Shown here: piece after piece, positions 16,488 to 63,970 of the stretch | How positions within the stretch are numbered: the stretch's first letter is position 1 | Layout of the letters: every line of letters begins with the position of its first letter | Assembly: GCF_006345805.1 (NCBI RefSeq) | Contig: NC_043005.1 | Location: forward strand, 53,072,001-53,136,000 | Reading direction: 5' to 3' | Source: Octopus sinensis | Lineage: Eukaryota | Length of the DNA stretch: 64,000 nucleotides | Translations under genes and position numbers: made by a program | Notes under the pieces: generated by a model | The model's input: the letters and a program-made list of their open reading frames with translations, nothing else | What the model was told of the DNA's origin: nothing | Database searches by the model: none

Positions 16488-17784
16488 CGAGGGGTGTATG
16501 AAAAGTCTTGAGCCTCAAAAAAACCAAACATGGTAAAGACTTCTGATGATTTATTTTTCAACATAGTCCCCCTCGATGGCTGAACACTGTCTCCAGCGGT
16601 GCCGAAGCACTATTATCCCGGCGTAGAAGAACTCTTCTGTTTGAGACTTCAAGAAACTGCTTACAGCGTCTATGACGTCATTGTCACTGGCAAAATGGCT
16701 ACCAAACAGGGCTTTTTTCATTTATAGAAATAGAGGAATGTCAGAGGGGGCTAAGTCTGGCGAATAAGGCGAATGGGGAACAAGTTCGTATCAACAATCA
16801 CGAATTCTTGCCATGGCAACCACTGAGGCGTGGGATGGGGCATTCTCGGGATGAAAAAGGACTCTTCTGGTGAGCATTTCCGGCCTTTTTTCTTTGATTG
16901 CTTTTCGGAGGTGTTTCAGTAGCTGAGAATAATACATCCCTGTCACGGTGTGACTCTTTTCAAGGTAATCAATCAGCAAGACGCCTTGAGAATCCCAAAA
17001 GACGGACGCCATGACCTTGCCAGCTGAAGGAATGACCCTGGCCTTCTTTGGGGTAGGAGAAGATGTGTGTTTCTATTGCTTTGATTGTTCTTTGGTTTCA
17101 GGCTGGTAGTGATGAACCCAACTTTCGTCCATAGTAATGAAACGAGCAAGAAAATTCTCTTCATCGGCTTTAAAAAGTTCCAGATTGCTTGTGGACAAAG
17201 TAAACCTGGTACGTTTCTGTTCAGGAGTCAAAAGGCGAAGGACCCACCTTGCAGAAACCTTTGAGAACCCAAGTTCTTTTGTCACAATGTTGTCTGCTCT
17301 TTCGGTTGAGATGCTCAGTCTCTCGGCTATCTGACGACATGATATTCGGCGATCTTGTATTATCGTACCAAGAGCAAGGTCAAGGTTGTCCTTTGTGGTT
17401 ACGGTTGGAGGTCTCCCTTGTCTGGGATCATCTTCCACACTCTCCCTGCCACGTTTGAATTCATTTACCCAGCGTTTGACTGTTGCATATGAAGGAGAAT
17501 TGTCTGTTAAGGTTCTCACCATATCTTCATGGATTTCTGATGGAGTCATGCCTTTCAAATGAAGGTACTTTATGACAGCACGATACTCATTTTTCACCAT
17601 TTTCCTTGTAAACTCGAAGCTTGTTTATTCAAAAATCTGCAAAAAAAAAAAAAAAAAATAAAATATCAGAATCATGAAAATGAGCAAGAATACTCCGAAA
17701 AGACTGTACTTACCAGAAAAAAATTGTTTCAGCTATATAGCAGCCCCGTTTCTAGGTTAGGCTCAAAACTTTTCATACACCCCT

Positions 17785-24617: not shown

Positions 24618-25567
24618 TTTTGTGCACAACAGCTTTATTGGTTACAAATTTCTAAAGGCCAGAATGTGAATGTCTTATAAGCAAATATTGCAAGTGTTTA
24701 TTCGAATTTCATCTGTTCTTCAGTTTGATGGCCGACGTTTTTATCCTTCGTTAGTATACATCGACGAAAGATACATATAAACATACAAAAATTTAATTAT
24801 TGATAACAGAAGCAGTTACCAAAAGCGACAGAAGCAGATACCAAAAGGTAATCTTTATAGCCAACTTAACATGGATGTCTTCGTAGAACACAGGGAACGG
24901 CGTTATTAACTTTGAAAGATCCTCCTATAAATGTGCTCGGTCCATAAAAGCACACACATAGATCGTTGCAGATAAGAATCACCTATCATTGGGCACCAGA
25001 ATTCACACATCACATTATTTCATTCAACTGAAAATCATCAGTGGGACTCGTCCAGTCACTGCATGTCAGTCAAATATCGCTTCTACGATATATATAAAAT
25101 ATCGGCCTCTTTTCAGACACTGATGTCGCAAATATCCAGCAGGCCTATTAGAAATTAATCATTAGTGATGGAAGCAGTATTAATATCAAAAGATAATCTT
25201 TATAGCCAACTTAACATGAATGTCTTGTCAGAATACCGAATGCTGTGTTTCGCAATTGTTCAAAAACATAATTCAGATAATTAGCTTTTCCAATACAACA
25301 TGGCACTTTGTCAGTAACGACGTCAAGGATTCCAGCTGATCCGTGCAAAATGACTGAGCACTCCACAGACGCGTATCGTTAACATAGTTCTCATGGTGAT
25401 CCAACGTCACACAGAATATGACAAGGCTATTCTTTTGAATTACAGGTGCTACTCATTTTTTTCAGCTGAGTGGGTGGAGTAAAATGAAATAAAGTGACTC
25501 ACTCAAGCTAACAATGCACTACTGGGAATCGAACCCATGATCGTTACGTCGGGGTCCGAATACGTTA

Positions 25568-25982
25568 ACCTATTTCTTTACTACCCACAAGGGGCTAAAC
25601 ACAGAGAGGAAAAACAAGGACAGACAAATGGATTAAGTTGATTATATTGACCCCAGTGCGTAACTGGTACTTATTTAATCGACCCCGAAAGGATGAAAGG
25701 CAAAGTCTACCTCGGCGGAATTTGAACTCAGAACGTAGTGGCAGACGAAAAACCTATTTCTTTACTACCCACAAGGGGCTAAACACAGAGGGGACAAACA
25801 AGGACAGACAAACGGATTAAGTCGATTATATCGACCCCAGTGCGTAACTGGTACTTATTTAATCGACCCCGAAAGGATAAAAGGCAAAGTCTACCTCGGC
25901 GGAATTTGAACTCAGAACGCAGCGGCAGACGAAATACCGCAAAGCATTTCGCTCGGCGTGCTAACATTTCTGCCAGCTTGCC
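25568..25982 (-). mobile_element. SINE family A head-to-tail dimer
   Basis: Two core+tail-1 units about 185 bp apart, joined at AAAGAAATA|GGTTTTTCGTCTG. Confidence 0.9.
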
Positions 25983-31106: not shown

Positions 31107-31275
31107 ATACATATATATGAATGTATGTATGTATACGACGGGATTTTTTCAGTTTCCGTCTACCAAATCCCCTCACAAGTCTTTGGTTGGCCCAAGGCTA
31201 AAGTAGAAGACACTCGCCCAAGTTGCCGCGCAATGGGACTGAACCCGGAATCATGTGGTTGGGAAGCAACGCCCG
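30930..31275 (-). mobile_element. SINE family B
   Basis: Reverse complement of the family B consensus, partly deleted. Confidence 0.8.
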
Positions 31276-31529: not shown

Positions 31530-31567
<38 letters not shown>

Positions 31568-31844
31568 ACAATTGAGGGTAAAATTAATTAATTAATCAAT
31601 TTCACCAAGTGTTCAGTATGTAAAAGGACCATTTAAGGCGAATTCAAAATATTACATTATAAAATTAGGGCTTAGTAAAATAAATTACTTTGCCACATAC
31701 TAAACTTAGTAGAAATAGCAGCCAAAAAAAATTTTCTTAGCATTTCTACTACTTAAAGAAAATTTCTCTCAGATAATGTTTACTCCAGACAGCTCACGAA
31801 GGTTTGGGGGTAAATACAGAAAAATATCACAAGTACATAGATCG

Positions 31845-31907
31845 TTTGAGTACGTCAACGTTTCAAGATTAGCCAAATAAAATCAGCATTTCTTTCGTCA
31901 GCTCAAA
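31845..31907 (-). ncRNA. Type I hammerhead ribozyme (family 2, copy 1)
   Basis: Reverse complement: TTTGAG CTGACGA AAGA-aatgctgattttatttggctaa-TCTT GAAA CG-TTGA-CG TA|CTCAAA. 6-bp stem I, intact core, 4-bp stem II, 3-bp stem III, GUA cleavage triplet. Confidence 0.8.
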
Positions 31908-32402
31908 ATTTCTTAATTTGGATTTGGAAACACAAAAAAGAAGGAACTTTACCTATCAGCGAACTTGTCGCTTCAGATGAACCACTCCAACTAAAAAGTG
32001 TCAACAAATTCAAAATGCGCAGGCGTAAAATTCTACTAAGTTCAGTATGTGGCAAAGTAATTTATTTTACTAAGCCCTAATTATATAATGTAATATTTTG
32101 AATTCGCCTTAAATGGTCCTTTTACATACTGAACACTTGGTGAAATTGATTAATTAATTAATTTTACCCTCAATTGTTGATATTATAATTCATTTCTCTC
32201 GGTCATACTGCCTCGGTTCTCGCGGTTAAAATATAATGTTTGCTAGATAGACCACGTGGGTGGAATGGGGAGTGCAGAATTTTACGCCTGCGCATTTTGA
32301 ATTTGTTGACACTGTTTAGTTGGAGTGGTTCATCTGAAGCGACAAGTTCGCTGATAGGTAAAGTTCCTTCTTTTTAGTGTTTCCAAATCCAAATTAAGAA
32401 AT

Positions 32403-32464
32403 TTTGAGCTGACGAAAGAAATGCTGATTTTATTTGGCTAATCTTGAAACGTGACGTACTCAAA
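32403..32464 (+). ncRNA. Type I hammerhead ribozyme (family 2, copy 2)
   Basis: TTTGAG CTGACGA AAGA...TCTT GAAA CG-TGA-CG TA|CTCAAA; predicted cleavage after 32458. Confidence 0.78.
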
Positions 32465-32645
32465 CGATCTATGTACTTGTGATATTTTTCTGTATTTACC
32501 CCCAAACCTTCGTGAGCTGTCTGGAGTAAACATTATCTGAAAGAAATTTTCTTTAAGTAGTAGAAATGCTAAGAAAATTTTTTTTGGCTGCTATTTCTAC
32601 TAAGTTCAGTATGTGGCAAAGTAATTTATTTTACTAAGCCCTAAT

Positions 32646-32720
<75 letters not shown>

Positions 32721-32721
32721 C

Positions 32722-33650
32722 AGGGAATATTTCGAAGGGAATAAAAAATATAAACACTTACCATCTAACTCCTGTACCATGGTTTCAAACTCGATTTAGC
32801 AAATAAAGTAATTTGCCCGGCAAATTTCTCATCAGCGGGAGCGCCAAGATTAACATACAAATACGAGGCAACACAGTGCATGCCTCGTGCTTACATATAA
32901 CTTTTCAAACCCACCGCGTAAGCGCAGTTTTATTTTTTGTCAGCAGCAAATAAAACTAATACCGAGTTGCTTCAAAATATTAGCCCCGAAAATTATAAAT
33001 AAATATCAGGGAAGGAAAAATCTCAGAAATTTTTACTACCATTGGCCTAACATGTGGAAAACTAGTCAATAGACTTCGAAATTATCCCTAATAGTGGGTT
33101 GGATTTTGACTACTCCTTCTAGGGTGTTAGATGTCCTATTATAGTAATTTCTTATATGTTTAAATGTACACTGTATTTATATGAATAATATATGGTCTAT
33201 TGACTAGTTTTCCACATGCTTTGCCACTGATAGTAAAAATTTCTGAGATTTTTCCTACCCTGATATTTATTAAAAATTTTTGGGGCTAATTTTTTGAAAC
33301 AAGTCAGCATTATTTTTCTTTGCTGCCGACAAAATAAAAAAAAGAAAAAAACTGCGCTTGCGCGGTGGATTTGAAAAATTATAATATGTAAGCACCAAGC
33401 ATGTACTGTGTTGCCTCGTATATTTATGCTAATCTTGGCGCTCCTGCTGATGAGGACTTCGCTTGGAAATATACTTTATTTGCTAACTAGAGTTTGTAAC
33501 CATGGCCCAGAAGTTAGATGGTAAATGTTTTTATTTTTCATTCCCTTCGAAATTATCCTCAATAGTGGTTTGGATTTTGACTACTCCTTCTAGTGTGTTA
33601 GATGTTCTATTATCTCCATCTCTTATGTGTTTAAATGTATACTGTATTTT
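32722..33650. repeat. Older X-Y-X'-Y inverted/direct repeat element
   Basis: X (about 32722-33073) is the reverse complement of about 33195-33555 at roughly 80% identity by eye; Y (about 33074-33190) recurs directly at about 33547-33650. Confidence 0.8.
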
Positions 33651-33930
33651 ATTATATATATATATGTACATATACATATATATATATACTTACATACAAA
33701 CACACACACACACACATATATATAGTAAATCCCCCAAAACAAGGACAACAAACACAAAAAAAACAATGCGAGGACTTGGTACATGTAAATTATTAGCAGA
33801 CGCAACAGGGAAGGAAAGAAAGATCGTTTAACGTTTCGGGCAACGTTCTTCTTCAAAAAGAGAGGAAAGTCCAATAGAAAGGAAGATGGAGAAAATTCCC
33901 AACGGTTCACATCTGGTTACATTTTGAAAG

Positions 33931-33962: not shown

Positions 33963-34170
33963 TCTTTTATTCTTTTATTTGTTTCAGTCAGACTGTGGCC
34001 ATGCTGGAGCATCACCTTTAGTCGAACAAATAAACCCCAGGGCTTATTCTTTGTAAACCTAATACCTATTCTATCAGTCTCTTTTGCCGAACTGTTAAGT
34101 TATGGGGATATAAACACACTAACGTCGGTTGTAAAGCAATGGTGAGGGAGACAAACACAGACACACAAAC
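33960..34170 (-). mobile_element. SINE family B 3' fragment
   Basis: Matches the family B tail. Confidence 0.8.
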
Positions 34171-34594: not shown

Positions 34595-34802
34595 ACCCCT
34601 CTGTCCGGCACTAGTCGCATGATAGATCGTTAGCCACTACACAGATTTTTTTCTCTCCTTGTTTTTTCTGTGTCCCTTTCTGTAAAAGAGCGTAGGCTCG
34701 AAACGTAAAATACTTTTTCTATTCCTGAGCGTTATACTAATACATCTGTTGTTTTGTTACACCACCTGTCTTCGTCTTTTGTTTTTTTCGTAAACTCTCC
34801 CT
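34595..34802 (+). mobile_element. Probable Penelope-like element terminal fragment in (TA)n
   Basis: Pyrimidine-rich body with GAGC-GTAG-GCTC-GAAACGTA, the stem II/GAAAC part of a PLE-type minimal hammerhead. A similar motif lies on the minus strand at about 33825-33860. Confidence 0.45.
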
Positions 34803-34858
34803 ATATATGTATATATGTATATATATATGTATATATATATATATAAATATATATATAT

Positions 34859-34897
<39 letters not shown>

Positions 34898-35019
34898 TAA
34901 CAATTTAGGAATGGCCTAAACAGGCCATTCGTCCACTAGAAAGAGCAGCCATAACTCCAACCGCCAAGTAGTGTAATTCGGAAATAAGGTGAAAATTTAA
35001 AAACATTTACCCTAATTCA

Positions 35020-35120
35020 TCTTTTATACGATGCATCGTTTCAGTGTCTTTAATGATAGACCAGCTTAATTAAATTAAATTAAGCTAGTCTACCATAGGT
35101 CACACTTCATCAGTAAAAGA
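35020..35120 (-). ncRNA. Type I hammerhead ribozyme (family 1, unit 1)
   Basis: Reverse complement: TCTTTTA CTGATGA AGTGT-[long hairpin]-ACACT GAAA CGATGCATCG TA|TAAAAGA. 7-bp stem I, intact core, 5-bp stem II, palindromic stem III ACGATGCATCGT, GUA triplet; predicted cut between 35027 and 35026. Confidence 0.88.
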
Positions 35121-35491
35121 AACCTGGGAGAGACGGATATATACGAGGCGACTGTATCAATGCCTCGAGAATATCTGTCTTAAAATTTTCAAGACCAACG
35201 CATTCGCGCCAAACTTATCGGCAGCAAATATAAACTGCCGATTCAATCTCAGAATTAGTCAGAAAATTATCAATTAATCAATTAGGGTAGCAAAAAATTC
35301 AGTAAAAATTTATCGCTACCAGCGGCCTAATGGAAAAGAGAAAATAGTCAAAGACTAAATATGTAAAATAAACAATTTAGGAATGGCCTAAACAGGCCAT
35401 TCGTCCACTAGAAAGAGCAGCCATAACTCCAACCGCCAAGTAGTGTAATTCGGAAATAAGGTGAAAATTTAAAAACATTTACCCTAATTCA

Positions 35492-35591
35492 TCTTTTATA
35501 CGATGCATCGTTTCAGTGTCTTAATGATAGACCAGCTTAATTAAATTAAATTAAGCTAGTCTACCATAGGTCACACTTCATCAGTAAAAGA
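35492..35591 (-). ncRNA. Type I hammerhead ribozyme (family 1, unit 2)
   Basis: Same motif, core intact. Confidence 0.87.
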
Positions 35592-35960
35592 AACCTGGGA
35601 GAGACGGATATATACGAGGCGACTGTATCAATGCCTCGAGATATCTGTCTTAAAATTTTCAAGACCAACGCATTCGCGCCAAACTTATCGGCAGCAAATA
35701 TAACTGCCGATTCAATCTCAGAATTAGTCAGAAAATTATCAATTAATCAATTTAGGGTAGCAAAAAATTCAGTAAAAATTTATCGCTACCAGCGGCCTAA
35801 TGGAAGAGAAAATAGTCAAAGACTAATATGTATAAATATAACAATTTAGGAATGGCCTAAACAGGCCATTCGTCCACTAGAAAGAGCAGCCATAACTCCA
35901 ACCGCCAAGTAGTGTAATTCGGAAATAAGGTGAAAATTTAAAAACATTTACCCTAATTCA

Positions 35961-36061
35961 TCTTTTATACGATGCATCGTTTCAGTGTCTTTAATGATAG
36001 ACCAGCTTAATTAAATTAAATTAAGCTAGTCTACCATAGGTCACACTTCATCAGTAAAAGA
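35961..36061 (-). ncRNA. Type I hammerhead ribozyme (family 1, unit 3)
   Basis: Same motif, core intact. Confidence 0.87.
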
Positions 36062-36434
36062 AACCTGGGAGAGACGGATATATACGAGGCGACTGTATCA
36101 ATGCCTCGAGAATATCTGTCTTAAAATTTCAAGACCAACGCATTCGCGCCAAACTTATCGGCAGCAAATTAAACTGCCGATTCAATCTCAGAATTAGTCA
36201 GAAAATTATCAATTATCAATTTAGGGTAGCAAAAAATTCAGTAAAAATTTATCGCTACCAGCGGCCTAATGGAAAAGAGAAAATAGTCAAAGACTAAATA
36301 TGTATAAATATAACAATTTAGGAATGGCCTAAACAGGCCATTCGTCACTAGAAAGAGCAGCCATAACTCCAAACGCCAAGTAGTGTAAGTGTTCGGAAAT
36401 AAGGTGAAAATTTAAAAACATTTACCCTAATTCA

Positions 36435-36534
36435 TCTTTTATACGATGCATCGTTTCAGTGTCTTTAATGATAGACAGCTTAATTAAATTAAATTAAGCT
36501 AGTCTACCATAGGTCACACTTCATCAGTAAAAGA
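36435..36534 (-). ncRNA. Type I hammerhead ribozyme (family 1, unit 4)
   Basis: Core intact; 1-nt deletion in the stem II extension. Confidence 0.86.
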
Positions 36535-36907
36535 AACCTGGGAGAGACGGATATATACGAGGCGACTGTATCAATGCCTCGAGAATATCTGTCTTAAAAT
36601 TTTCAAGACCAACGCATTCGCGCCAAACTTATCGGCAGCAAATAAAACTGCCGATTCAATCTCAGAATTAGTCAGAAAATTATCAATTAATCAATTTAGG
36701 GTAGCAAAAAATTCAGTAAAAATTATCGCTACCAGCGGCCTAATGGAAAAGAGAAAATAGTCAAAGACTAAATATGTATAAATATAACATTTAGGAATGG
36801 CCTAAACAGGCCATTCGTCCACTAGAAAGAGCAGCCATAACTCCAACCGCCAAGTAGTGTGTAATTCGGAAATAAGGTGAAAATTTAAAAACATTTACCC
36901 TAATTCA

Positions 36908-37006
36908 TTTTTATACGATGCATCGTTCAGTGTCTTTAATGATAGACCAGCTTAATTAAATTAAATTAAGCTAGTCTACCATAGGTCACACTTCATCAGT
37001 AAAAGA
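36908..37006 (-). ncRNA. Hammerhead (family 1, unit 5) with core lesion
   Basis: GAAA reads GAA and stem I lacks one base; this is either a real lesion or a consensus error. Confidence 0.7.
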
Positions 37007-37381
37007 AACCTGGGAGAGACGGATATTATACGAGGCGACTGTATCAATGCCTCGAGAATATCTGTCTTAAAATTTTCAAGACCAACGCATCGCGCCAAAC
37101 TTATCGGCAGCAAATATAAACTGCCGATTCAATCTCAGAATTAGTCAGAAAATTATCAATTAATCAATTTAGGGTAGCAAAAAATTCAGTAAAAATTTAT
37201 CGCTACCAGCGGCCTAATGGAAAAGAGAAAATAGTCAAAGACTAAATATGTATAAATATAACAATTTAGGAATGGCCTAAACAGGCCATTCGTCCACTAG
37301 AAAGAGCAGCCATAACTCCAACCGCCAAGTAGTGTGTAATTCGGAAAAAGGTGAAAATTTAAAAACATTTACCCTAATTCA

Positions 37382-37481
37382 TCTTTTATACGATGCATCG
37401 TTTCAGTGTCTTTAATGATAGACCAGCTTAATAAATTAAATTAAGCTAGTCTACCATAGGTCACACTTCATCAGTAAAAGA
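37382..37481 (-). ncRNA. Type I hammerhead ribozyme (family 1, unit 6)
   Basis: Core intact. Confidence 0.86.
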
Positions 37482-37850
37482 AACCTGGGAGAGACGGATA
37501 TATACGAGGCGACTGTATCAATGCCTCGAGAATATGTCTTAAAATTTTCAAGACCAACGCATTCGCGCCAAACTTATCGGCAGCAAATATAAACTGCCGA
37601 TTCAATCTCAGAATTAGTCAGAAAATTATCAATTAATCAATTTAGGGTAGCAAAAAATTCAGTAAAATTTATCGCTACCAGCGGCCTAATGGAAAAGAGA
37701 AAATAGTCAAAGACTAAATATGTATAAATATAACATTTAGGAATGGCCTAAACAGGCCATTCGTCACTTGAAAGAGCAGCCATAACTCCAACCGCCAAGT
37801 AGTGTAATTCGGAAATAAGGTGAAAATTTAAAAACATTTACCCTAATTCA

Positions 37851-37950
37851 TCTTTTATACGATGCATCGTTCAGTGTCTTTAATGATAGACCAGCTTAAT
37901 TAAATTAAATTAAGCTAGTCTACCATAGGTCACACTTCATCAGTAAAAGA
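37851..37950 (-). ncRNA. Hammerhead (family 1, unit 7) with core lesion
   Basis: GAAA reads GAA. Confidence 0.7.
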
Positions 37951-38325
37951 AACCTGGGAGAGACGGATATTATACGAGGCGACTGTATCAATGCCTCGAG
38001 AATATCTGTCTTAAAATTTTCAAGACCAACGCATTCGCGCCAAACTTATCGGCAGCAAATATAAACTGCGATTCAATCTCAGAATTAGTCAGAAAATTAT
38101 CAATAATCAATTTAGGGTAGCAAAAAATTCAGTAAAAATTTATCGCTACCAGCGGCCTAATGGAAAAGAGAAAATAGTCAAAGACTAAATATGTATAAAT
38201 ATAACAATTTAGGAATGGCCTAAACAGGCCATTCGTCCACTAGAAAGAAAGAGCAGCCATAACTCCAAACCGCAAGTAGTGTAATTCGAAATAAGGTGAA
38301 AATTTAAAAACATTTACCCTAATTC

Positions 38326-38370
<45 letters not shown>

Positions 38371-53369: not shown

Positions 53370-54205
53370 AGAGAAGGTGCAGGAATAACCTGTCGTCTAA
53401 ATTAATGCAAAAATGAAAATAACACTAAAATTACATAAAAATATCTTGAAATACTAAAGAGTAAATTTAATCTATAAATTTACTCTATAATTGGCTTCAA
53501 TCACACGGCTTCCAGACGACTTGGAATTTTCTGTAACTCTCTGGACGGTTCCCGGGTATAAGTTGGTGAATGCTGACATGATCATTGCTTTCAGTTCATC
53601 TTTGGTGTTAAAAGGGTTTTGTTGGTCTCTCGCTCAACTGCACCCCACACATAATAATTAAGCGGGTTTCAGTCGGGGGGTATTAGGTGGCCAAATCTTA
53701 GGGGTGATGTGGTCATAGAAATTGTCTGACAGCCATGACTGGAGCTCTTGCTTTTGCGGCATGGTGCAGAGTCCTGTTGCCACACATAGGATTTTCCAGC
53801 AGGCACACTCTGCTTCCAGGCACATGATGTAGGTTTTCGTGTTGAGTCTGAGGCCGTGTGGGAAGATGAGTGGAGGCATAACTTCGCCATCACTCGTGAT
53901 CACTCCAAACACCATGATGTTGACTGAAAGTTTGATTTTCATCACTCTCGGTGTACATGTCCTCCGATTTGAACCCAAACACTCTGAAATGTTCGTATTG
54001 GAGCCTCCGGCGCGAATGCCAAGCAGTACAGCATGTTGTTTCCAAATTTCTGGCAGAGTGAATTGCGTCATGGTGCTGTTTTTTCTCATAGACGGTGCCC
54101 AACTGACCCTACTATACTATGTAGCGGACCAAATCAAAAATAAACAATACGCATGCGTACAAATAAAAAATATAAAATGGTATAATTCACCCATCGCACA
54201 CTGTA
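53370..54205 (-). mobile_element. Internally deleted maT/DD37D transposon, copy 2 (direct duplicate)
   Basis: Near-identical to copy 1 including the flanking GATAGATAGAGAGAG; period about 960 bp. Confidence 0.85.
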
Positions 54206-58510: not shown

Positions 58511-60507
58511 ATGGCAACTAGAAACCACGTGGCTAGCCCGCCAGTCATGCAGAACGGTAGCAAACACTATTGCTACCACTAGCTGCTAAACATCGCAGCG
58601 TGAACACCGCTGTCACCACCATCACCACCACCAACAACAACAACAACAAATCTAACGTCGCATTCACCATCGCCGCGACCAAAGACATTAACTTAGATTT
58701 CCCCTCACTCCCCACACCACTTGTTGATGATAAAGGGACAGAGAAAGGGATTTCAAAAATGAATACAAACGAAAACATGAATGCCAGCACCACCACCATC
58801 ACCACCAACAACAACAACGAAATTGGCACAAAGCCGCCTACCAAAGACAACACCGCCAACACCAACACCACTACTACGACGTCAAATGCTACATCCAAGC
58901 CTTCTGCTGCTAATACCGCCAACACCAACACCACTACCATGACTTCAATTAACACTGCCACAATTAACACTTCTACTGCCAAATTCAAAACGAATTTTGC
59001 GGACGTAACAAAACAAAAAGAACAATTGTAACATTCACCACACAAGAGATAAACCGCACAAAGGCACTCTTCTCCAAAGAAGGAGACAAATTGCACCTTC
59101 ATATTCCACAACACATCGTGGAAAACACGCAAAAAAAAACAATAATTTATAAAGTAATAAACAAAAAACAAGAAGAACAGAAAATGCACCGCAGGAAAAA
59201 ATCGATAAATGCCTTCGTCCTGTATGGGACTCCAAGGAATATATCAGTTGGGGAAACAATTTGGTACAGTCCAAGTACGTTTCCTCAACGAAAGTTTAGC
59301 AAAACGTTTTTCCACATTGGAGCTACATTCGGACGACTTGGTAATGATACCAGTCTATTTAAACAAAAGGGTCACGAAAGTCCAAATAAAAAACATACCA
59401 TTTGATGTCGAAACACAATGGGTGGTCTCTGCCATCTGCTTTGAAATGTCAGAGACAATGTCAGAGACAAACATCCTGGAAATCGCGGTTCTAGGAGAGA
59501 AAGACTATGTGGGCAAATCAATCGAATTCCTGCTTCAATTGGATGAAGCAGCAAGAGAGAAGATACCCACCGCTATAGAACTGCCAGGAGGCTACAAACT
59601 CTATATAGTGGTAGAGGGCAGGCGACCACGCTGCTATTTGTGTGGAAGCGAAACACACTTGAAAAAGACGTGCCCAACCACTGCACACCAAGAGCAACAA
59701 CAACAACCACTACCACAACCAAAGCACTCCGGAAAAAAAGCTCTACTACCCACACCACCATCAACACAGAAGACGACAAGAGAAGCACACCAAGCTAATC
59801 CGTCATCAACCAAAACCACTCGACACCTGGAAAAATACCAACACTACCATCAACAGCAAAACCCAAAGGAACAGAAAAACAAAGAAAACACACACAAACT
59901 GATCCCCCATCCCTTATACCGCACTCAACACACACAAACACTCAACAACCAACAACAACGAAAACAACAACACAACCACTTACACAGACATACATAGAAG
60001 CCCACAACATACCCCTACCCCCTTCTGATTCCTCAGAATTTCGTCGGAAGACGAAACCAGTGAGGAATGGCAAATAGCTACAAAAGAAGGAAAATAAAGA
60101 GCAGAAACACAACCAAACCAAATGCAAACACGAACAAAGCAGGGGGAAATACATCTCCCGAAGACATTTCAAAACCCAACGCAAACAACAGCCACACCAA
60201 CACCACAAAAACATATACAGCAAACATGCTCACAGCCATAGACACCAAAAACACAAATTTGATGGAATACATCCAATCAAAAACAAACATAACAGAAGAT
60301 GACATAAAAACAAACAACCACCCATACACAACACCACCAGACCACATCAAAATAATACACATCTCCAAAAGTCTGCACCACACACTCAAAGGCATTTTCC
60401 CCAGTGCGGTTGGTAAATGCCAAAATATCTCACAAAGAAACTGTACTGGGATCTTCTCGAGGACAAACCAACGGAGGAGAAAGCAAAAACTTTCGAGCAG
60501 TAAGTAA
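58511..60507 (+). CDS. LINE ORF1 (gag-like), split by single-base frameshifts
   Basis: Thr/Asn-rich N-terminus, RRM-like segment (TKVQIKNIPFDV), zinc knuckle CYLCGSETHLKKTC (CX2CX4HX4C). Pieces at 58570-59031, 59091-59405, 59209-59997 and 60067-60507. The start at 58511 is inferred. Confidence 0.75.
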
Positions 60508-60534
60508 CCCTCTGTATTCTAATTCATTAGAACT

Positions 60535-63500
60535 ATGATCAAGATTGGTTGTGTAAATGCGCGTGGCTTGGGGTCCCCTTGGAAACAAGGGTACCTCTTA
60601 AATGACATAAAGTCACATAAGTTAGAAATCATAGCCATAAGCGAGACCAGACTCCACAATCCGCGGGCCCTAAAGACCATGTTTGGCGGACAGTTCAACA
60701 TTTATTTTTCCCCCTGTCTGCCGAGAATGGGCGGTAGTGGCACCGCGGTACTTTTTCACAAGAGTCTGGATCTCAATGTAAGGACAATATTCGTAGACCC
60801 GGAGGGTAGACTGGTCGTCCTGGATGTCGACGGCAGCAATGGGTGCGCTTTTCGGCTCGTATCAGTTTACGCACCGCCCTTAACAGGTCGGGCGGATTTC
60901 TTTCAACGTCTAGAAGTTTTCTTGGGAACGTCTCGTCCTTTACTCTTAGTGGGGGATTGGAATGCTACCTTGGACACGCATGTAGACTACGTGGGTAGAG
61001 ATAGGAATAGACGGGGATGCAAATGCCTCAGAGACCTGCTCAGACGCTTTCAACTGTCTGACAGGTTTCGACTAGACCACCCGAATGCGCCAACGTGGAC
61101 ATGGAGCAACCGCATCGGGTCGTCGAGATCGTATCTAGATAGGATACTGTGTAGGACAGTAGATAGAGATAGCATAGGATGTCCACAATTCCACATAGTC
61201 AGCTACACGGATCACAAACTTGTGACATGTACGCTAGACTTAGGTAAGACACTTAGGCAGGGTCCCGGATACTGGAAACTAAACGCGTCTTTCCCATCGA
61301 GACAAGTTTTCAGGGACCGGATTAGCACACTAGTAAAGAGGGCTTTGACGGGAGCCATCATCAACAACAAATGGTGGTTTGCCCTCAAGAGAGCAGTAAA
61401 AGCAGAAGCGATTAGGTACAGCAAAGCACTAGCCATAGATAGAAATAGAGTAGAGGGTGAGCTAGTTAAGAAGCTAGAAGAAGAAGCAATTAGAAGCGGC
61501 ATCGCATCCGACGTTTTGGCGGCGAGGTTGGCCCTCGACCAACACTTCAACGCCAAACACGAAGGATGTGCTGTCAGAGCTAGGATGCGTGCTCTAAGGA
61601 ACGAAGGTGTTGGAGCCGCGAGAGAGGCCCGGGTGGCAGAGGCGCAACAGGGCAACAAAGCCACCATTCGGTCACTGGTAGATGAACAGGGGCGCGAATT
61701 GCTCGAGCCAAGTAAAATGTGTGAGGCCTTTCAGCAGCATTTTGCCCGACTGTTCGGAACGAGTGGAGGGCAAGAACGTAGGGTGGACTTCAGTGCCTAC
61801 CTACATAGCCTACCACGACTCTCGACAAGAAAGGCAGGGTGCTGCGAAGGTGCCATCACGGCGGCGGAAGTGCGGGAAGCGATGGCAGAATGCTCGAGGG
61901 ACAAATCACCGGGTTTGGATGGTCTACCCTACGAGCTTTACAATTGTATGCCAGACTTGTTTGGAGATCTCTTGGCGGCGGTGTACTGCAACTGGCAGCA
62001 AAACGGGAGCATTCCTGGTTTTGTGAGCCGAGGAGCCGTAACACTGCTGAAGAAAGATCTAAAAGGGAAATGTAATAGATAACTTTAGGCCCATCACTCT
62101 GCTTAATGCAGACTTGAAAATTTTGGCCAAGGTGCTAGCCAAGAGGTTGGCGCTTGTCATCGAGAAACTGGTCGACAAGGCGCAAACATGCGCCGTGCCA
62201 GGCCGGACCATCCATGACAACCTCCATCTGATGCGCTACATCATAGACAGGGTAGTTAACGAACCTGGCATGGGTGGGGCCCTGATCAACTTGGATCAAT
62301 CAAAAGCCTTTGATAGGGTAGACCATCGATACTTGGAGGCAGTCCTGAGAGCGGCTGGTTTCGGTCCCGTCTTCCGCGGCTGGATAGCTGCCTTGTACAG
62401 AGGCATCCGTTCGGTAATTCGCGTAAATGGACATCTATCGAGACCTTTCGACATTGCACGTTCGGTCCGTCAGGGATGCCCCCTCTCGGCGCTTCTATAC
62501 GTATTGACTCTTGAGCCACTACTGCGGAAGCTGGCGACTCTAAGGGGCATCCCGCGAGAATTGGGATGCGGGACGAGCGTGTCTGCATACGCGGACGACG
62601 TCACCGTCATAGTGTCTAGCCACGAGCACATCGAGCTGGTGCGGCGAGACACTGAAAAACTACGAAGCGGTGACAGGAGCGAAAATCAACCGGAAAAGTC
62701 AGTGGGCTTGCGACTAGGCACCTGGAGAAGCAAGCCCATGCCGTCCACCAGCGCCTCCGTCGTGGGACGCTGGACCGACGGCCCGGTTGAGTTGCTCGGG
62801 GTCTGGTTTGGTCCGGACCTCCAAGTGGAGAAGAACTGGAACGAGATAACGAGTAGGGTGGTCACTCTCGCCCGGCAATGGGCCGAGAGGAAACTGTCCC
62901 TAAAAGGTCGAGCGGAGGTGGCGAACACGTACATCGCGTCCGTCATCTACTACCGCCTGACCGTCGTACCTTGTCCCGACCCTACCATCACCAAACTACA
63001 ACGCATCCTCTTTCGCTTCTTGTGGAAAGGATGCGTCCCGATGGTCAGGCGATCCATTTGCTGTCAACACCCGTTAAAAGGAGGGCTGGGCATGCCGTGG
63101 TTGATGATGCGCAGACACGCGCTGAGACTGCGACATCTCTGGCTCTATGTAGACGACGGTGAACAGGTGTGGTCGCCGTTTGTGAGGCACGCTTTCCCGC
63201 AGCTCGTCTCCATGACCGAACTGCAGTCGTGGATCAAAAAGAGGCCGAGGAAGGGCGAATGGCACCGCGAGTGTCGCGTTGCTCTCAAGCAACTCTGCCG
63301 TCCTGGGTCGACCTTAAGTGACTTCAACACAACCAAAGCATTCTATAGGGGTTTAGTGGAGGGGAGGTACGACGACGAGCTCGGGGCGAACCTGGACGTC
63401 GACGAGGAGTACCTGACCCGCCTGTTCGGGACGACTTTCGGGCCAGGGCCCATGGACAACTTCCAGAGATCCCTGGCCTGGCAGTGCTACCGAGAAGCGC

Positions 63501-63970
63501 TACCCGTTCGGGATAAGCTCTACAGACACGGCTCGAGAAACACGGGGCCGACCTGCCCGAGATGCGGTCAGAGCGACGAAACCGTTCTGCACGCACTCGT
63601 TCAGTGTCCAACAATTCCGACCTGTGGGCTTATGTCGAACAACTGCTGTCACGTGTGGGACGAGTCGGTTTATCAGCTGAGTCTATCGTCAATATTGTCA
63701 CGCCTCCTTCCTTCAAACGGGAAGGAAGAGCTATTTTATCATCCTTGTGGCTATGGCGAAAGAATGTATCTGGTGGACGCGTCTGAAAGGATTGGAGACA
63801 AACACTTCCTCTCTGGTCAATCTCTCATCAACTTCTTCAAGTACCACTTGAAAAGGAAAGTGAGAGTAGAGAGGCAAGTTTTGTCTAGCGAATGTTTTAA
63901 AAAAAGATGGGTGAATGTAGCAAGAATGGCACGTATGAATGACGAAGCCACCTTGAGCATAGTCCTATGA
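60535..63970 (+). CDS. LINE ORF2: APE endonuclease - reverse transcriptase - CCHC, frameshifted
   Basis: CVNARGL, ISETRL, GDWNA, YLDRI, TDHK (APE); SPGLDG, FRPITLLNAD, LDQSKAFDRV, RQGCPLS, YADD at 62588-62599 (RT); CPRCGQSDETVLHALVQC. Frameshift at about 62060-62070. Confidence 0.93.

What the first reader, a model, noticed from the sequence alone, without database searches (positions are those of the whole stretch)
34890..38335. Tandem array of hammerhead-ribozyme units: candidate cephalopod non-LTR retrozyme (self-cleaving, circRNA-forming element)
Seen: each ~472-bp non-coding unit carries, on the minus strand, TCTTTTA-CTGATGA-AGTGT...ACACT-GAAA-CGATGCATCG-TA|TAAAAGA. That is a complete type I hammerhead with a 7-bp stem I, the CUGAUGA/GAAA core, stems II and III, and a GUA cleavage site. 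Five of the seven cores are perfect. Stem II is extended by an 18-bp hairpin (35054-35095) whose two non-Watson-Crick pairs are both G.U on the minus strand but A.C on the plus strand, which independently points to the minus strand as the RNA. Established: tandem repeats of a few hundred bp carrying type I hammerheads (newt satellite 2, Schistosoma Sm-alpha, the non-LTR retrozymes described by de la Pena and Cervera) give monomeric and circular RNAs. Palindromic stem III can favour dimeric, trans-paired cleavage. Inference: a transcript of this array would be cut into ~472-nt monomers and could circularise. I am not aware of this family being described, but I cannot search.
Basis: partly seen in the sequence, partly recalled or inferred. 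Interest (0 to 1): 0.95.

Follow-up and report, generated by a model that had tools for sequence, protein, structure and literature searches.

The report
Cephalopod hammerhead-ribozyme retrozyme repeat cluster
A 3.4-kb tandem repeat in what looks like an octopus-type genome carries a self-cutting hammerhead RNA motif in each 472-base unit, which makes it a new cephalopod example of an already described class of small mobile elements (non-LTR retrozymes) and not a new kind of thing.

Summary
Positions 34885-38335 hold 7.3 head-to-tail copies of a non-coding unit of ~472 bp (35% GC). Each unit carries a complete type I hammerhead on the minus strand, and 5 of the 7 are intact. The motif is not chance: 0 of 300 dinucleotide shuffles of the window give one.

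B is a 61%-identical relative of the array unit. A is a separate family. Across the three families the catalytic core is constant, while helices I and II change by compensatory substitutions and helix III stays palindromic. The full-length minus-strand monomer folds into the three-way junction in its minimum free energy structure (z = -8.5).

All features that could be tested for non-LTR retrozymes (Cervera and de la Pena 2020) are met. No Rfam hammerhead model detects any copy, and the 10.1-11.1 pair is A-U instead of G-C.

All six element boundaries abut (TA)n. Elements A and B are head-to-head inverted dimers, which points to integration by a Penelope-like-element type machinery.

RNA expression, cleavage and circle formation could not be tested. 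No copy was found outside the window.

Verdict: new member of a known kind; moderate interest.

The parts
34885..38335 (-). Array C: 7.3 head-to-tail copies of a ~472-bp non-coding retrozyme unit. The RNA sense is the minus strand.
   Evidence: TRF period 472, 97% matches; nhmmer unit model hits with E 1e-169 to 1e-175; no ORF over 72 aa; GC 35%.
35020..35120 (-). Intact type I hammerhead, copy 1. Cleavage is predicted between A17 (35027) and U1.1 (35026).
   Evidence: Descriptor hit with helices I/II/III of 7/5/4 bp; sequence.
35492..35591 (-). Intact hammerhead, copy 2
35961..36061 (-). Intact hammerhead, copy 3
36435..36534 (-). Intact hammerhead, copy 4
36907..37006 (-). Defective hammerhead, copy 5. 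GAAA is reduced to GAA and the stem I 3' strand reads UAAAAA. Both are single-base changes in homopolymer runs and may be assembly errors.
37382..37481 (-). Intact hammerhead, copy 6
37851..37950 (-). Defective hammerhead, copy 7 (GAAA reduced to GAA by a 1-nt deletion)
35054..35095 (-). Distal extension of helix II: an 18-bp hairpin with two G.U pairs, separated from the 5-bp proximal helix II by an internal loop. It recurs in every unit.
38327..38335 (-). RNA-sense 5' end of the array. The last unit stops at UAAAAGA, 0-2 nt from the predicted cleavage site, and is followed directly by (TA)n.
   Evidence: Sequence. Chance is about 3/475 if junctions are uniform, but about 1 in 5-7 if junctions favour TA runs.
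34802..34899 (.). (TA)n microsatellite abutting the RNA-sense 3' end of the array. The array ends in the unit's UAUUUAUA tract (consensus position ~137).
38332..38472 (.). (TA)n microsatellite abutting the RNA-sense 5' end of the array
33074..33650 (+). Element B, right arm: 1.2 units of a family ~61% identical to the array unit. Its 3' end lies in the homologous UAUUUAUA tract and abuts (TA)n. Its hammerhead at 33440-33514 is degraded (GUAA core, CC at the cleavage site).
   Evidence: nhmmer E 3.6e-14 against the array model, 8.5e-17 in reverse; alignment; coordinates.
32724..33073 (-). Element B, left arm: an inverted copy that meets the right arm head-to-head at 33073/33074. The hammerhead at 32768-32842 has an intact core (CUGAUGA, GAAA, GUA), a palindromic helix III (CCAUGG) and one C.A mismatch in stem I.
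   Evidence: nhmmer E 2.9e-13; inverted repeats I4 and I5 at 85-87%.
32031..32656 (+). Element A, right copy: 1.1 units of a separate 564-nt family. The intact type I hammerhead at 32403-32464 reads UUUGAG-CUGACGA-AAGA..UCUU-GAAA-CGUGACG-UA|CUCAAA.
   Evidence: Descriptor hit 6/4/3 bp; direct repeat D14.
31562..32034 (-). Element A, left copy: an inverted, circularly permuted 472 nt of the same unit, lacking the equivalent of 32184-32275. It is 98-99% identical to the right copy and carries an intact hammerhead at 31845-31907. The two 5' ends meet at 32031-32034, and both 3' ends abut (TA)n.
   Evidence: Inverted repeats I1-I3; blastn.
38940..38979 (+). Fragment D: a 40-nt piece of a B-like hammerhead 3' half (..GAGUUU-GAAA-CUAUGG-CC-CAGGAG), lying between (CA)n and (GT)n
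   Evidence: Direct repeat D16 at 88%; nhmmer E 1e-4.

Best explanation
The array is a genomic copy of a non-autonomous, non-coding retroelement of the non-LTR retrozyme class, in a cephalopod (octopod-like) genome.

Shown from sequence:
- Each ~472-nt unit encodes a complete type I hammerhead on the minus strand.
- The minus-strand RNA is unusually well folded, and the hammerhead junction is part of its best fold.
- Related and unrelated hammerhead elements sit next to it.
- The hammerhead helices covary between families while the core is fixed.
- Every element boundary abuts a (TA)n microsatellite.

Inferred from the described biology of the class:
- A minus-strand transcript running through the array cuts itself after GUA in each unit.
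- The array's ribozyme may cut as a single motif, because it has a 4-bp helix III. It may also cut as a double hammerhead, in which two neighbouring motifs pair their palindromic helix III sequences into a 12-bp helix.
- A reverse transcriptase supplied in trans copies circular or multimeric RNA into tandem cDNA at nicked (TA)n sites. This enzyme is most likely from a Penelope-like element.
- One-sided priming gives long head-to-tail arrays, as in C. Priming from both ends of the break gives head-to-head inverted dimers, as in A and B.
For: 1. Motif and array are confirmed. No strict hammerhead appears in 300 shuffles of the window, yet two unrelated sequence families in the window pass.
2. 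Element B is homologous to the array unit over almost its whole length at ~61% identity. Between families C, B and A, stem I pairs 2.1-1.1, 2.3-1.3 and 2.4-1.4 change on both sides (A-U to G-C, U-A to C-G, U-A to G-C). So do stem II pairs 10.3-11.3 and 10.4-11.4. CUGAYGA, GAAA, A15.1-U16.1 and H17 stay fixed in the intact copies.
3. Helix III is palindromic in all three families (ACGAUGCAUCGU, ACCAUGGU, ACGUUGACGU). Monomer/dimer energies are -2.0/-20.7, 0.0/-13.2 and -0.6/-12.8 kcal/mol. This matches the dimeric mode described for metazoan type I hammerheads (PMC4209133).
4. A real genomic unit (35498 to 35027, minus strand) folds to -148.9 kcal/mol, z = -8.5, and its minimum free energy fold contains helices I, II and III. 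The plus strand gives -115.7 kcal/mol, z = -5.5. In a local 175-nt context the catalytic fold costs only +2.2 kcal/mol over the minimum free energy fold.
5. Class features are met: no ORF, GC 35%, no tRNA-like part, and unit length and copy number within the ranges reported (150-450 bp in PMC7229834; 51-972 bp in bioRxiv 10.64898/2026.07.22.740005, where most families had at most seven repeat units).
6. All six boundaries of A, B and C abut (TA)n, against 5.7% of window positions by chance. A and B are head-to-head inverted dimers with 3' ends facing outward. C and B-right end in the same homologous UAUUUAUA tract. The literature reports a (TA)n insertion bias, tandem plus inverted 5'-truncated copies, internal initiation of reverse transcription, and cleavage and extension of both target strands for Penelope-like elements (PMC8557442, PMC11167929).
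7. The array's RNA-sense 5' end lies 0-2 nt from the predicted cleavage site.
Against: - No Rfam hammerhead model matches any of the copies, at the gathering score or at E<=10.
- The 10.1-11.1 pair, usually G-C, is A-U in C and A and G.U in B.
- Helix II carries a long insertion, so the usual loop 1-loop 2 tertiary contacts cannot be recognised.
- On its own, the 120-nt hammerhead region does not place helices I and III in its minimum free energy fold.
- The covariation rests on only three families (five sequences), all from one window.
- No copy was found outside the window. There are no RNA data of any kind.
- No Penelope-like ORF is in the window. The only reverse transcriptase is an APE-type LINE at 60.5-64 kb.
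- The match between the array's 5' end and the cleavage site may only reflect TA microhomology with the target.
- The units are so alike that the array could have grown by unequal exchange, or could be mis-assembled.
Confidence: 0.8

Rival explanations
1. This is an ordinary satellite or tandem repeat. The hammerhead-like motif is a dead relic or a coincidence, and no self-cleaving or circular RNA is made today.
For: Rfam models do not recognise the motif. The 10.1-11.1 pair is non-canonical. Two of seven cores are broken, and element B's right-arm ribozyme is clearly decayed. There is no expression evidence.
Against: There are 0 hits in 300 shuffles. The core is conserved and the helices change by compensation between families that are only 61% identical. 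The minimum free energy fold of the full-length unit contains the whole junction, and the folding is strongly asymmetric between strands. The array units are near-identical, so amplification was recent.
Confidence: 0.08
2. The repeats are not an independent non-autonomous family. They are the pseudo-LTR parts of Penelope-like elements, left as internally deleted or partial copies, so the hammerhead belongs to the life cycle of the autonomous element.
For: The hallmarks of Penelope-like elements are present: (TA)n targets, partial tandems, inverted 5'-truncated copies, and hammerheads with a palindromic helix III (PMC8557442, PMC4209133). A 2026 preprint derives animal retrozymes from PLE pseudo-LTRs (10.64898/2026.07.22.740005).
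Against: No RT or GIY-YIG reading frame lies in or between the units. The longest ORF in the array is 72 aa, and the only RT in 64 kb is an APE-type LINE. Seven consecutive complete units of 472 nt with no coding remnant fit a retrozyme better than a deleted PLE. The two views overlap and do not exclude each other.
Confidence: 0.12
3. The element is the same, but it is moved differently. The units are copied by an APE-type LINE (such as the one at 60.5-64 kb) through ordinary target-primed reverse transcription and twin priming, and not by a Penelope-like element.
For: A LINE with an endonuclease and a reverse transcriptase is in the window. Twin priming by LINEs also yields inverted copies (established for L1; my knowledge). 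No PLE ORF is seen in the window.
Against: The units have no poly(A) or LINE-like 3' tail. The published (TA)n bias, extension of both strands and internal initiation are reported for Penelope-like elements (PMC8557442, PMC11167929). Retrozymes and PLEs co-occur in all species analysed (PMC7229834, 10.64898/2026.07.22.740005).
Confidence: 0.15
4. The 7.3-copy array was not made by rolling-circle or multimer reverse transcription. It grew from one or two inserted units by unequal crossing-over or replication slippage, or its copy number is an assembly artefact.
For: The units are near-identical, and their differences are mostly 1-nt indels typical of long-read noise. Tandem arrays in general expand by unequal exchange (established knowledge).
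Against: Elements A and B already contain more than one unit (1.1 and 1.2) with circular permutation. That is expected from a circular or multimeric template and not from later expansion. Arrays of up to about seven units are typical of the class (10.64898/2026.07.22.740005).
Confidence: 0.2

Closest known systems
Metazoan non-LTR retrozymes (Cervera and de la Pena 2020, PMC7229834), for example those of the mussel Mytilus galloprovincialis, the coral Acropora millepora and the axolotl
   Same: A type I hammerhead in every unit; head-to-tail repeats of a few hundred bp; low GC; no ORF, LTR, PBS or PPT; highly self-paired RNA. The mussel hammerheads likewise lack the classical loop 1-loop 2 contact nucleotides.
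   Different: The host is a cephalopod, which is not named in the papers I could search. The unit of 472 nt is above the ~170-400 nt typical of invertebrates. Helix II carries an 18-bp distal hairpin beyond an internal loop. The 10.1-11.1 pair is A-U. The motif is invisible to Rfam. Expression and circles are not shown here.
Hammerheads in the pseudo-LTRs of Penelope-like elements (Cervera and de la Pena 2014, PMC4209133; Craig et al. 2021, PMC8557442)
   Same: Type I topology; a palindromic helix III suited to dimeric action; a helix II longer than usual; motif pairs 100-700 bp apart on opposite strands; partial tandems with inverted 5'-truncated copies; a (TA)n insertion bias.
   Different: There is no RT/GIY-YIG ORF between the repeats. 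Helix III is longer (4 bp plus a loop) than in the minimal PLE hammerheads. [quoted passage not shown] G10.1-C11.1 is not kept.
Satellite hammerheads: newt satellite 2, Schistosoma Sm-alpha, and the Dolichopoda cave-cricket pDo500 satellite (PMC2837043)
   Same: A tandem repeat of a few hundred bp that encodes a type I hammerhead; a weak or palindromic helix III; compensatory changes in the stems, including at 10.1-11.1 in the crickets.
   Different: The sequence family is different. This is a short interspersed array of about 7 units within a cluster of insertions, not a large satellite block. Helix II is greatly extended.
Plant LTR retrozymes (Cervera et al. 2016, PMC4918200)
   Same: Non-autonomous elements with hammerheads that are proposed to spread through circular RNA.
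   Different: The plant elements have type III hammerheads inside LTRs, a PBS and a PPT, 4-bp target site duplications and a dimeric layout. None of these is present here.

Membership tests
Hammerhead ribozyme, type I | Conserved core C3-U4-G5-A6-N7-G8-A9 and G12-A13-A14 | tested here: met
   CUGAUGA and GAAA are in 5 of 7 array copies. The other two have GAA through a 1-nt deletion. The core is also intact in A (CUGACGA/GAAA) and in B-left.
Hammerhead ribozyme, type I | Three helices around the core, with helix I open-ended and helices II and III closed (type I topology) | tested here: met
   Helices I/II/III of 7/5/4 bp. All three are present in the minimum free energy fold of a full-length genomic unit.
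Hammerhead ribozyme, type I | An A15.1-U16.1 pair and a non-G nucleotide (H17) 5' of the scissile bond | tested here: met
   GAAA-CGAUGCAUCG-UA|U gives A15.1-U16.1 and A17, with triplet GUA.
Hammerhead ribozyme, type I | G10.1-C11.1 closing pair of helix II (highly conserved, not absolute) | tested here: not met
   A-U in families C and A, and G.U in B. A purine is kept at 10.1 in all three. Compensated variation at this pair occurs in the cave-cricket satellite hammerhead (PMC2837043).
Hammerhead ribozyme, type I | Helices supported by compensatory base changes among relatives | tested here: met
   Two-sided changes occur at stem I pairs 1, 3 and 4 (and at 2 and 6 against family A) and at stem II pairs 3 and 4, between families C, B and A. 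Only five sequences are available, all from one window.
Hammerhead ribozyme, type I | A match to the curated covariance models (Rfam Hammerhead_1 and relatives) | tested here: not met
   No hammerhead hit at the gathering score over the whole window, nor at E<=10 over 34800-38400 or 31560-33660.
Hammerhead ribozyme, type I | Tertiary contact between helix I and helix II loops that allows activity at physiological Mg2+ | tested here: inconclusive
   Internal loops lie after 7 bp of helix I (AGGUU/UGAAUUA) and after 5 bp of helix II, at about the right distance. The known contact nucleotides cannot be recognised.
Hammerhead ribozyme, type I | [quoted passage not shown] | not testable with these tools
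   This needs in vitro transcription. The only hint is that the array's 5' end lies 0-2 nt from the site, and that is ambiguous.
Metazoan non-LTR retrozyme | Head-to-tail tandem repeats of roughly 150-450 bp, each with a type I hammerhead | tested here: met
   Period 472, 7.3 copies. This is slightly above the 150-450 bp of PMC7229834 but inside the 51-972 bp of 10.64898/2026.07.22.740005.
Metazoan non-LTR retrozyme | Low GC content (below 45-50%) | tested here: met
   35.2%.
Metazoan non-LTR retrozyme | Non-coding, with no LTRs, PBS or PPT | tested here: met
   Longest ORF is 72 aa. No flanking long direct repeats apart from the unit itself. No tRNA-like sequence. PBS and PPT were not searched for with a dedicated tool.
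Metazoan non-LTR retrozyme | RNA predicted to be stable and highly self-paired, with the hammerhead free to form | tested here: met
   -148.9 kcal/mol, z = -8.5, with the hammerhead in the minimum free energy fold. The circular form folds to -143.8 against -111.3 kcal/mol for the antisense.
Metazoan non-LTR retrozyme | [quoted passage not shown] | not testable with these tools
   No transcriptome data were reachable. The spurious-ORF search of the protein collection found nothing.
Metazoan non-LTR retrozyme | Coexists with autonomous Penelope-like elements in the same genome | not tested
   No PLE ORF is among the ORFs of at least 130 aa in the window. The literature reports PLEs (Naiad remnants) in cephalopods (PMC8557442).
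Autonomous Penelope-like element | An ORF with a reverse transcriptase and a GIY-YIG endonuclease between the hammerhead-bearing pseudo-LTRs | tested here: not met
   No such ORF lies within or between elements A, B and C.
Plant LTR retrozyme | Type III hammerheads inside long terminal repeats, with a PBS and a PPT | tested here: not met
   The topology is type I (helix I open), and there are no LTRs.

The most novel reading that the evidence does not exclude
The cluster preserves the integration signature of animal retrozymes, which the published descriptions say is missing. Three independent insertions from two or three families all landed in (TA)n. Two of them are head-to-head dimers, as expected if both ends of the break primed cDNA synthesis. 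Two families end at the same homologous internal tract. One long array stops at the ribozyme cleavage site.

If this pattern holds genome-wide, it would be sequence-level evidence for two things. First, a Penelope-like-element type enzyme (both-strand extension, internal initiation) mobilises retrozymes. Second, the template had been cut by its own hammerhead in vivo. It would also establish a hammerhead variant (A10.1-U11.1, with a two-part helix II whose internal loop may replace loop 2) that current covariance models cannot see. That would imply that retrozymes are under-counted in cephalopods and perhaps elsewhere.
Probability: 0.3. Interest if true: 0.55.

Novelty: new member of a known kind. 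Interest (0 to 1): 0.35.

Why it matters
Retrozymes are a recently recognised source of abundant small circular RNAs in animals. Who mobilises them, and what they do, are still open questions.

A cephalopod family would extend the host range within molluscs. Three points give it modest practical value:
1. Rfam hammerhead models miss all three families in this window. Genome annotations that rely on those models, such as the 235 Hammerhead_1 hits in the giant squid genome, probably under-count these elements.
2. The neighbouring insertions offer a natural experiment on integration, through their (TA)n targets, inverted dimers and shared 3' end. A genome-wide census could turn this into a test of the idea that Penelope-like elements mobilise retrozymes.
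3. A compact unit of ~472 nt with a ribozyme that may be active as a monomer is a candidate scaffold for making circular RNA.

None of this changes the established picture of the class.

Tried and rejected
1. Rfam cmscan of the whole window at gathering scores, and of 34800-38400 and 31560-33660 at E<=10, gave no hammerhead hit. The listed hits are low-complexity or inverted-repeat artefacts: mir-297 and similar on (TA)n, and MIR821 on element B's inverted arms. I read this as limited model sensitivity. Element A's compact and otherwise canonical motif is also missed, so the result is not evidence against the motif.

2. A metagenome scan with CTGATGAAGTGT-N{45,75}-ACACTGAAAC gave two contigs (L001, L002). 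These are chance matches, with no nhmmer homology to the unit and no helices I or III.

3. An exact scan for GAAACGATGCATCGTATAAAAG in genome contigs and viral contigs gave 0 hits.

4. A protein search with the array's 72-aa spurious ORF, meant to reach homologous arrays in other assemblies, found no candidate.

6. Loci around RT homologues (Argonauta hians L003, NCBI L004, ENA L005 and L006, 63 kb in all) contain no hammerhead and no homologue of A, B or C.

7. RNAalifold on the non-ribozyme part of C, B-left and B-right shows shared hairpins, but with three sequences and a covariation term of +2.8 it is not convincing.

8. A tRNA-derived (SINE-like) origin was considered. ARAGORN finds nothing in 29-41 kb.

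9. I first read the 3' ends on TA-rich tracts as microhomology priming. [quoted passage not shown]

10. I first read the array's 5' end at the cleavage site as a clear fossil of self-cleavage. I downgraded it after finding that the site is itself one of about 5 TA-run clusters in the unit.

Full report
**1. The observation**

Tandem Repeats Finder reports one long-period array in the window: 34885-38335, period 472, 7.3 copies, 97% matches and 2% indels. Read on the minus strand, each unit contains UCUUUUA-CUGAUGA-AGUGU[58 nt]ACACU-GAAA-CGAUGCAUCG-UA|UAAAAGA. In hammerhead numbering this gives:
- a 7-bp helix I;
- the CUGAUGA and GAAA core strands;
- a 5-bp proximal helix II;
- helix III made of A15.1-U16.1 plus CGA/UCG with a UGCA loop;
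- cleavage after GUA.

The predicted cleavage sites fall at +strand 35026/35027, 35498/9, 35967/8, 36441/2, 36913/4, 37388/9 and 37857/8.

A descriptor search that I wrote recovers five intact copies. The other two have GAA in place of GAAA, and one of them also has UAAAAA in place of UAAAAGA.

The 18-bp hairpin at 35054-35095 has two G.U pairs on the minus strand, which become A.C mismatches on the plus strand. The energies are -23.8 and -15.0 kcal/mol.

The unit has no reading frame: the longest stop-free stretch in the consensus is 62 codons with no Met, and GC is 35%.

**2. Is it more than chance?**

In 300 dinucleotide-preserving shuffles of the 64-kb window, scanned on both strands, the strict descriptor found no hit. 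A relaxed descriptor averaged 0.033 hits per shuffle. In the real window two unrelated sequence families pass the strict descriptor.

**3. A caveat on the array**

The units differ mainly by 1-nt deletions (31) and insertions (13), many of them in homopolymer runs, and true substitutions are few. Two readings fit. The array may be very young, or the differences may be long-read assembly noise. Under the second reading the two broken cores and the exact copy number may not be real.

**4.

The descriptor also found a different hammerhead, UUUGAG-CUGACGA-AAGA..UCUU-GAAA-CGU(U)GACG-UA|CUCAAA. It occurs twice, in opposite orientation, at 32403-32464 (+) and 31845-31907 (-). Repeat analysis and nhmmer then resolved three elements that lie between successive (TA)n microsatellites.

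- **Element A (31562-32656)** belongs to a 564-nt unit family. The right copy is 1.1 units on the plus strand. The left copy is an inverted, circularly permuted 472 nt. The arms are 98-99% identical, and their 5' ends meet at 32031-32034.
- **Element B (32724-33650)** is homologous to the array unit over nearly its full length (nhmmer E = 3.6e-14 and 2.9e-13; reciprocal 8.5e-17; ~61% identity). It is again a head-to-head inverted pair, meeting at 33073/33074. The arms are 85-87% identical, so it is an older insertion. Its left-arm hammerhead (32768-32842) has an intact core. The right-arm hammerhead (33440-33514) has decayed to GUAA and CC.
- **Fragment D (38940-38979)** is a 40-nt piece of a B-like ribozyme.

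**5. Comparative evidence for the ribozyme**

B and C are homologous but diverged, and A is independent, so the helices can be compared position by position.

- **Stem I.** Pair 2.1-1.1 is A-U in C and G-C in B and A. Pairs 2.3-1.3 and 2.4-1.4 are U-A in C and C-G in B. Against C, family A also shows A-U at pair 2, G-C at pair 3 and U-A at pair 6.
- **Stem II.** Pairs 10.3-11.3 and 10.4-11.4 are U-A and G-C in C, and A-U and C-G in B-right.
- **Core.** The core strands, A15.1-U16.1 and H17 are unchanged in all intact copies.
- **Helix III.** It is a perfect or near-perfect palindrome in all three families although the sequences differ: ACGAUGCAUCGU, ACCAUGGU and ACGUUGACGU. Computed monomer hairpin and dimer duplex energies are -2.0/-20.7 (C), 0.0/-13.2 (B) and -0.6/-12.8 kcal/mol (A).

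This is the pattern described for metazoan type I hammerheads that act as double hammerheads in tandem transcripts (PMC4209133). The array's ribozyme, with 4 bp plus a tetraloop, could also work alone. Family B's could not.

The sample is small: five sequences from one window. Even so, the direction of the evidence is clear.

**6. Folding**

A real genomic unit, taken from cleavage site to cleavage site (35498 to 35027, minus strand), folds to -148.9 kcal/mol. That is z = -8.5 against 100 shuffles, and the minimum free energy structure contains helices I, II and III. The plus strand reaches only -115.7 kcal/mol, z = -5.5. As circles, sense and antisense give -143.8 and -111.3 kcal/mol.

In a 175-nt local context the catalytic fold lies 2.2 kcal/mol above the minimum free energy fold. 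In a 120-nt context only helix II appears in the minimum free energy fold. The strand asymmetry agrees with the G.U argument that the minus strand is the RNA.

All three families share a two-part helix II: a proximal helix of 4-7 bp, an internal loop, and a distal hairpin. Helix I of the array is followed by an internal loop (AGGUU/UGAAUUA). These internal loops might provide the tertiary contact that loops 1 and 2 give in canonical motifs. This is my inference and was not tested.

**7. Why Rfam is silent**

No hammerhead family is reported at the gathering score for the whole window, nor at E<=10 for the array or for elements A and B. Element A's motif is compact and otherwise canonical, and it is missed too. 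I therefore attribute the failure to limited model sensitivity, from two causes: the insertions in helix II and the non-G-C pair at 10.1-11.1.

That pair is described as highly conserved (PMC4209133), although it varies with compensation in the cave-cricket satellite ribozyme (PMC2837043). All three families here keep a purine at 10.1. From my own knowledge, purine N7 at 10.1 contributes to the A9/G10.1 metal site, so keeping a purine there is reasonable. The A-U pair may still lower activity.

**8. What kind of element it is**

The features that define metazoan non-LTR retrozymes are:
- a type I hammerhead in each unit of a short head-to-tail repeat;
- low GC;
- no ORF, LTR, PBS or PPT;
- highly self-paired RNA (PMC7229834, PMC7761336).

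All of these that can be tested from sequence are met. Unit length and copy number fit a recent survey, which found consensus lengths of 51-972 bp and at most seven repeat units in 75% of families (10.64898/2026.07.22.740005).

The host assignment rests on the LINE reverse transcriptase at 62114-63970. Its best named relatives are from the octopod Argonauta hians (58%) and the cuttlefish Acanthosepion pharaonis (37%).

In the library I could search, no paper describes retrozymes in cephalopods. The giant squid genome paper, however, lists 235 Rfam Hammerhead_1 hits (PMC6962438), and the class is reported in molluscs, namely mussels (PMC7229834).

**9. How it probably moves**

All six boundaries of A, B and C abut (TA)n, whereas only 5.7% of window positions lie within 12 nt of such a tract. 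The RNA-sense 3' ends face outward. The 3' ends of C and B-right fall in the same homologous UAUUUAUA tract. A and B are head-to-head dimers that contain more than one unit with circular permutation.

The published properties of Penelope-like elements match these signatures:
- an insertion bias for (TA)n, and partial tandems with an adjacent inverted 5'-truncated copy (PMC8557442);
- cleavage and extension of both target strands, and initiation of reverse transcription at internal template sites (PMC11167929).

[quoted passage not shown] The shared 3' end here could therefore reflect either a recognised start site or microhomology with the TA target. I cannot tell which.

No Penelope-like ORF is in the window, and the only reverse transcriptase is an APE-type LINE. 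The identity of the mobilising enzyme therefore remains an inference from the literature.

**10. The array's 5' end**

The last unit stops at ...UCUUUUA, 0-2 nt from the predicted scissile bond, and is then joined to (TA)n. If junctions were uniform, the chance of this would be about 3/475. But the cleavage site (..GUA|UAAAAG) is itself one of about five clusters of alternating TA in the unit, and the other end of the array lies in another such cluster. If junctions merely favour TA microhomology, the chance rises to about 1 in 5-7. I treat it as a hint of run-off on a self-cleaved template and no more.

**11. What could not be done**

I found no copy of any of the three families outside the window. 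I tried a metagenome pattern scan (only chance hits), exact scans of the prokaryotic and viral collections, a protein search with a spurious ORF, and 63 kb of DNA around related LINE copies. Genome-wide copy number, population-level covariation and expression are therefore untested. Cleavage and circularisation need bench work.

**12. Verdict**

The element is a new member of a known kind: a cephalopod family, or small group of families, of non-LTR retrozymes. It has an atypical hammerhead, with an extended two-part helix II and A10.1-U11.1, that Rfam does not detect.

Interest is moderate (0.35), not 0.95. The most useful follow-up is a genome-wide junction census, which could test the proposed link to Penelope-like elements.

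Noticed in passing
window 59209-63970 (+): A nearly complete APE-type LINE. It has an ORF1-like frame with a CCHC-like motif (59209-59997), an endonuclease (60535-62082, Exo_endo_phos) and a reverse transcriptase (62114-63970, RVT_1 and zf-RVT), with one interruption between EN and RT. It runs off the end of the window. The best named relative is from Argonauta hians at 58% identity.
   Followed up: partly
protein P0005: A protein labelled 'MAG: zinc-binding domain-containing protein [Herbaspirillum sp.]' is 57% identical to this cephalopod LINE reverse transcriptase over 67% of its length. This is probably animal DNA binned into a bacterial metagenome-assembled genome.
   Followed up: no
window 33991-34142 and 38495-38646; 31113-31269 and 38673-38829: Two-part interspersed repeat (80% and 76% identical copies) with an internal microsatellite, probably a SINE. 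Copies lie on both sides of the retrozyme cluster.
   Followed up: no
window 17073-17600 (-) and 53658-54089 (-): Fragments of a mariner/Tc1-like transposase. The first has HTH_48 and HTH_32 domains. The second has no Pfam hit but looks like a transposase C-terminal part.
   Followed up: partly
window 32991-33278 (+): Rfam reports MIR821, a plant miRNA family, at E = 1.4e-09 but far below its gathering score (59 vs 249 bits). The hit is simply the long inverted repeat formed by the two arms of element B, so it is a false lead.
   Followed up: yes
window 25567-25938: A tandem duplication of a 184-bp unit (2.0 copies, 95% identical) that resembles part of the interspersed repeat seen at 40502-40760.
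   Followed up: no
window 34885-38335 and 31562-32656: Differences between near-identical repeat copies are dominated by single-base indels in homopolymer runs (31 deletions and 13 insertions in the array). This suggests an unpolished long-read assembly. Small frame or core defects anywhere in this window should be read with that in mind.
   Followed up: partly
window, 95 tracts: Pure (TA)n tracts of at least 6 repeats cover 3.6% of the window in 95 tracts. Many other di- to tetranucleotide microsatellites are present, and several interspersed repeats end in them.
   Followed up: partly
L001 7168-9551 and L002 862-3245: The two metagenome contigs retrieved by chance share an 86-copy array of a 28-nt unit. 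They appear to be the same sequence from two samples and are unrelated to the finding.
   Followed up: no
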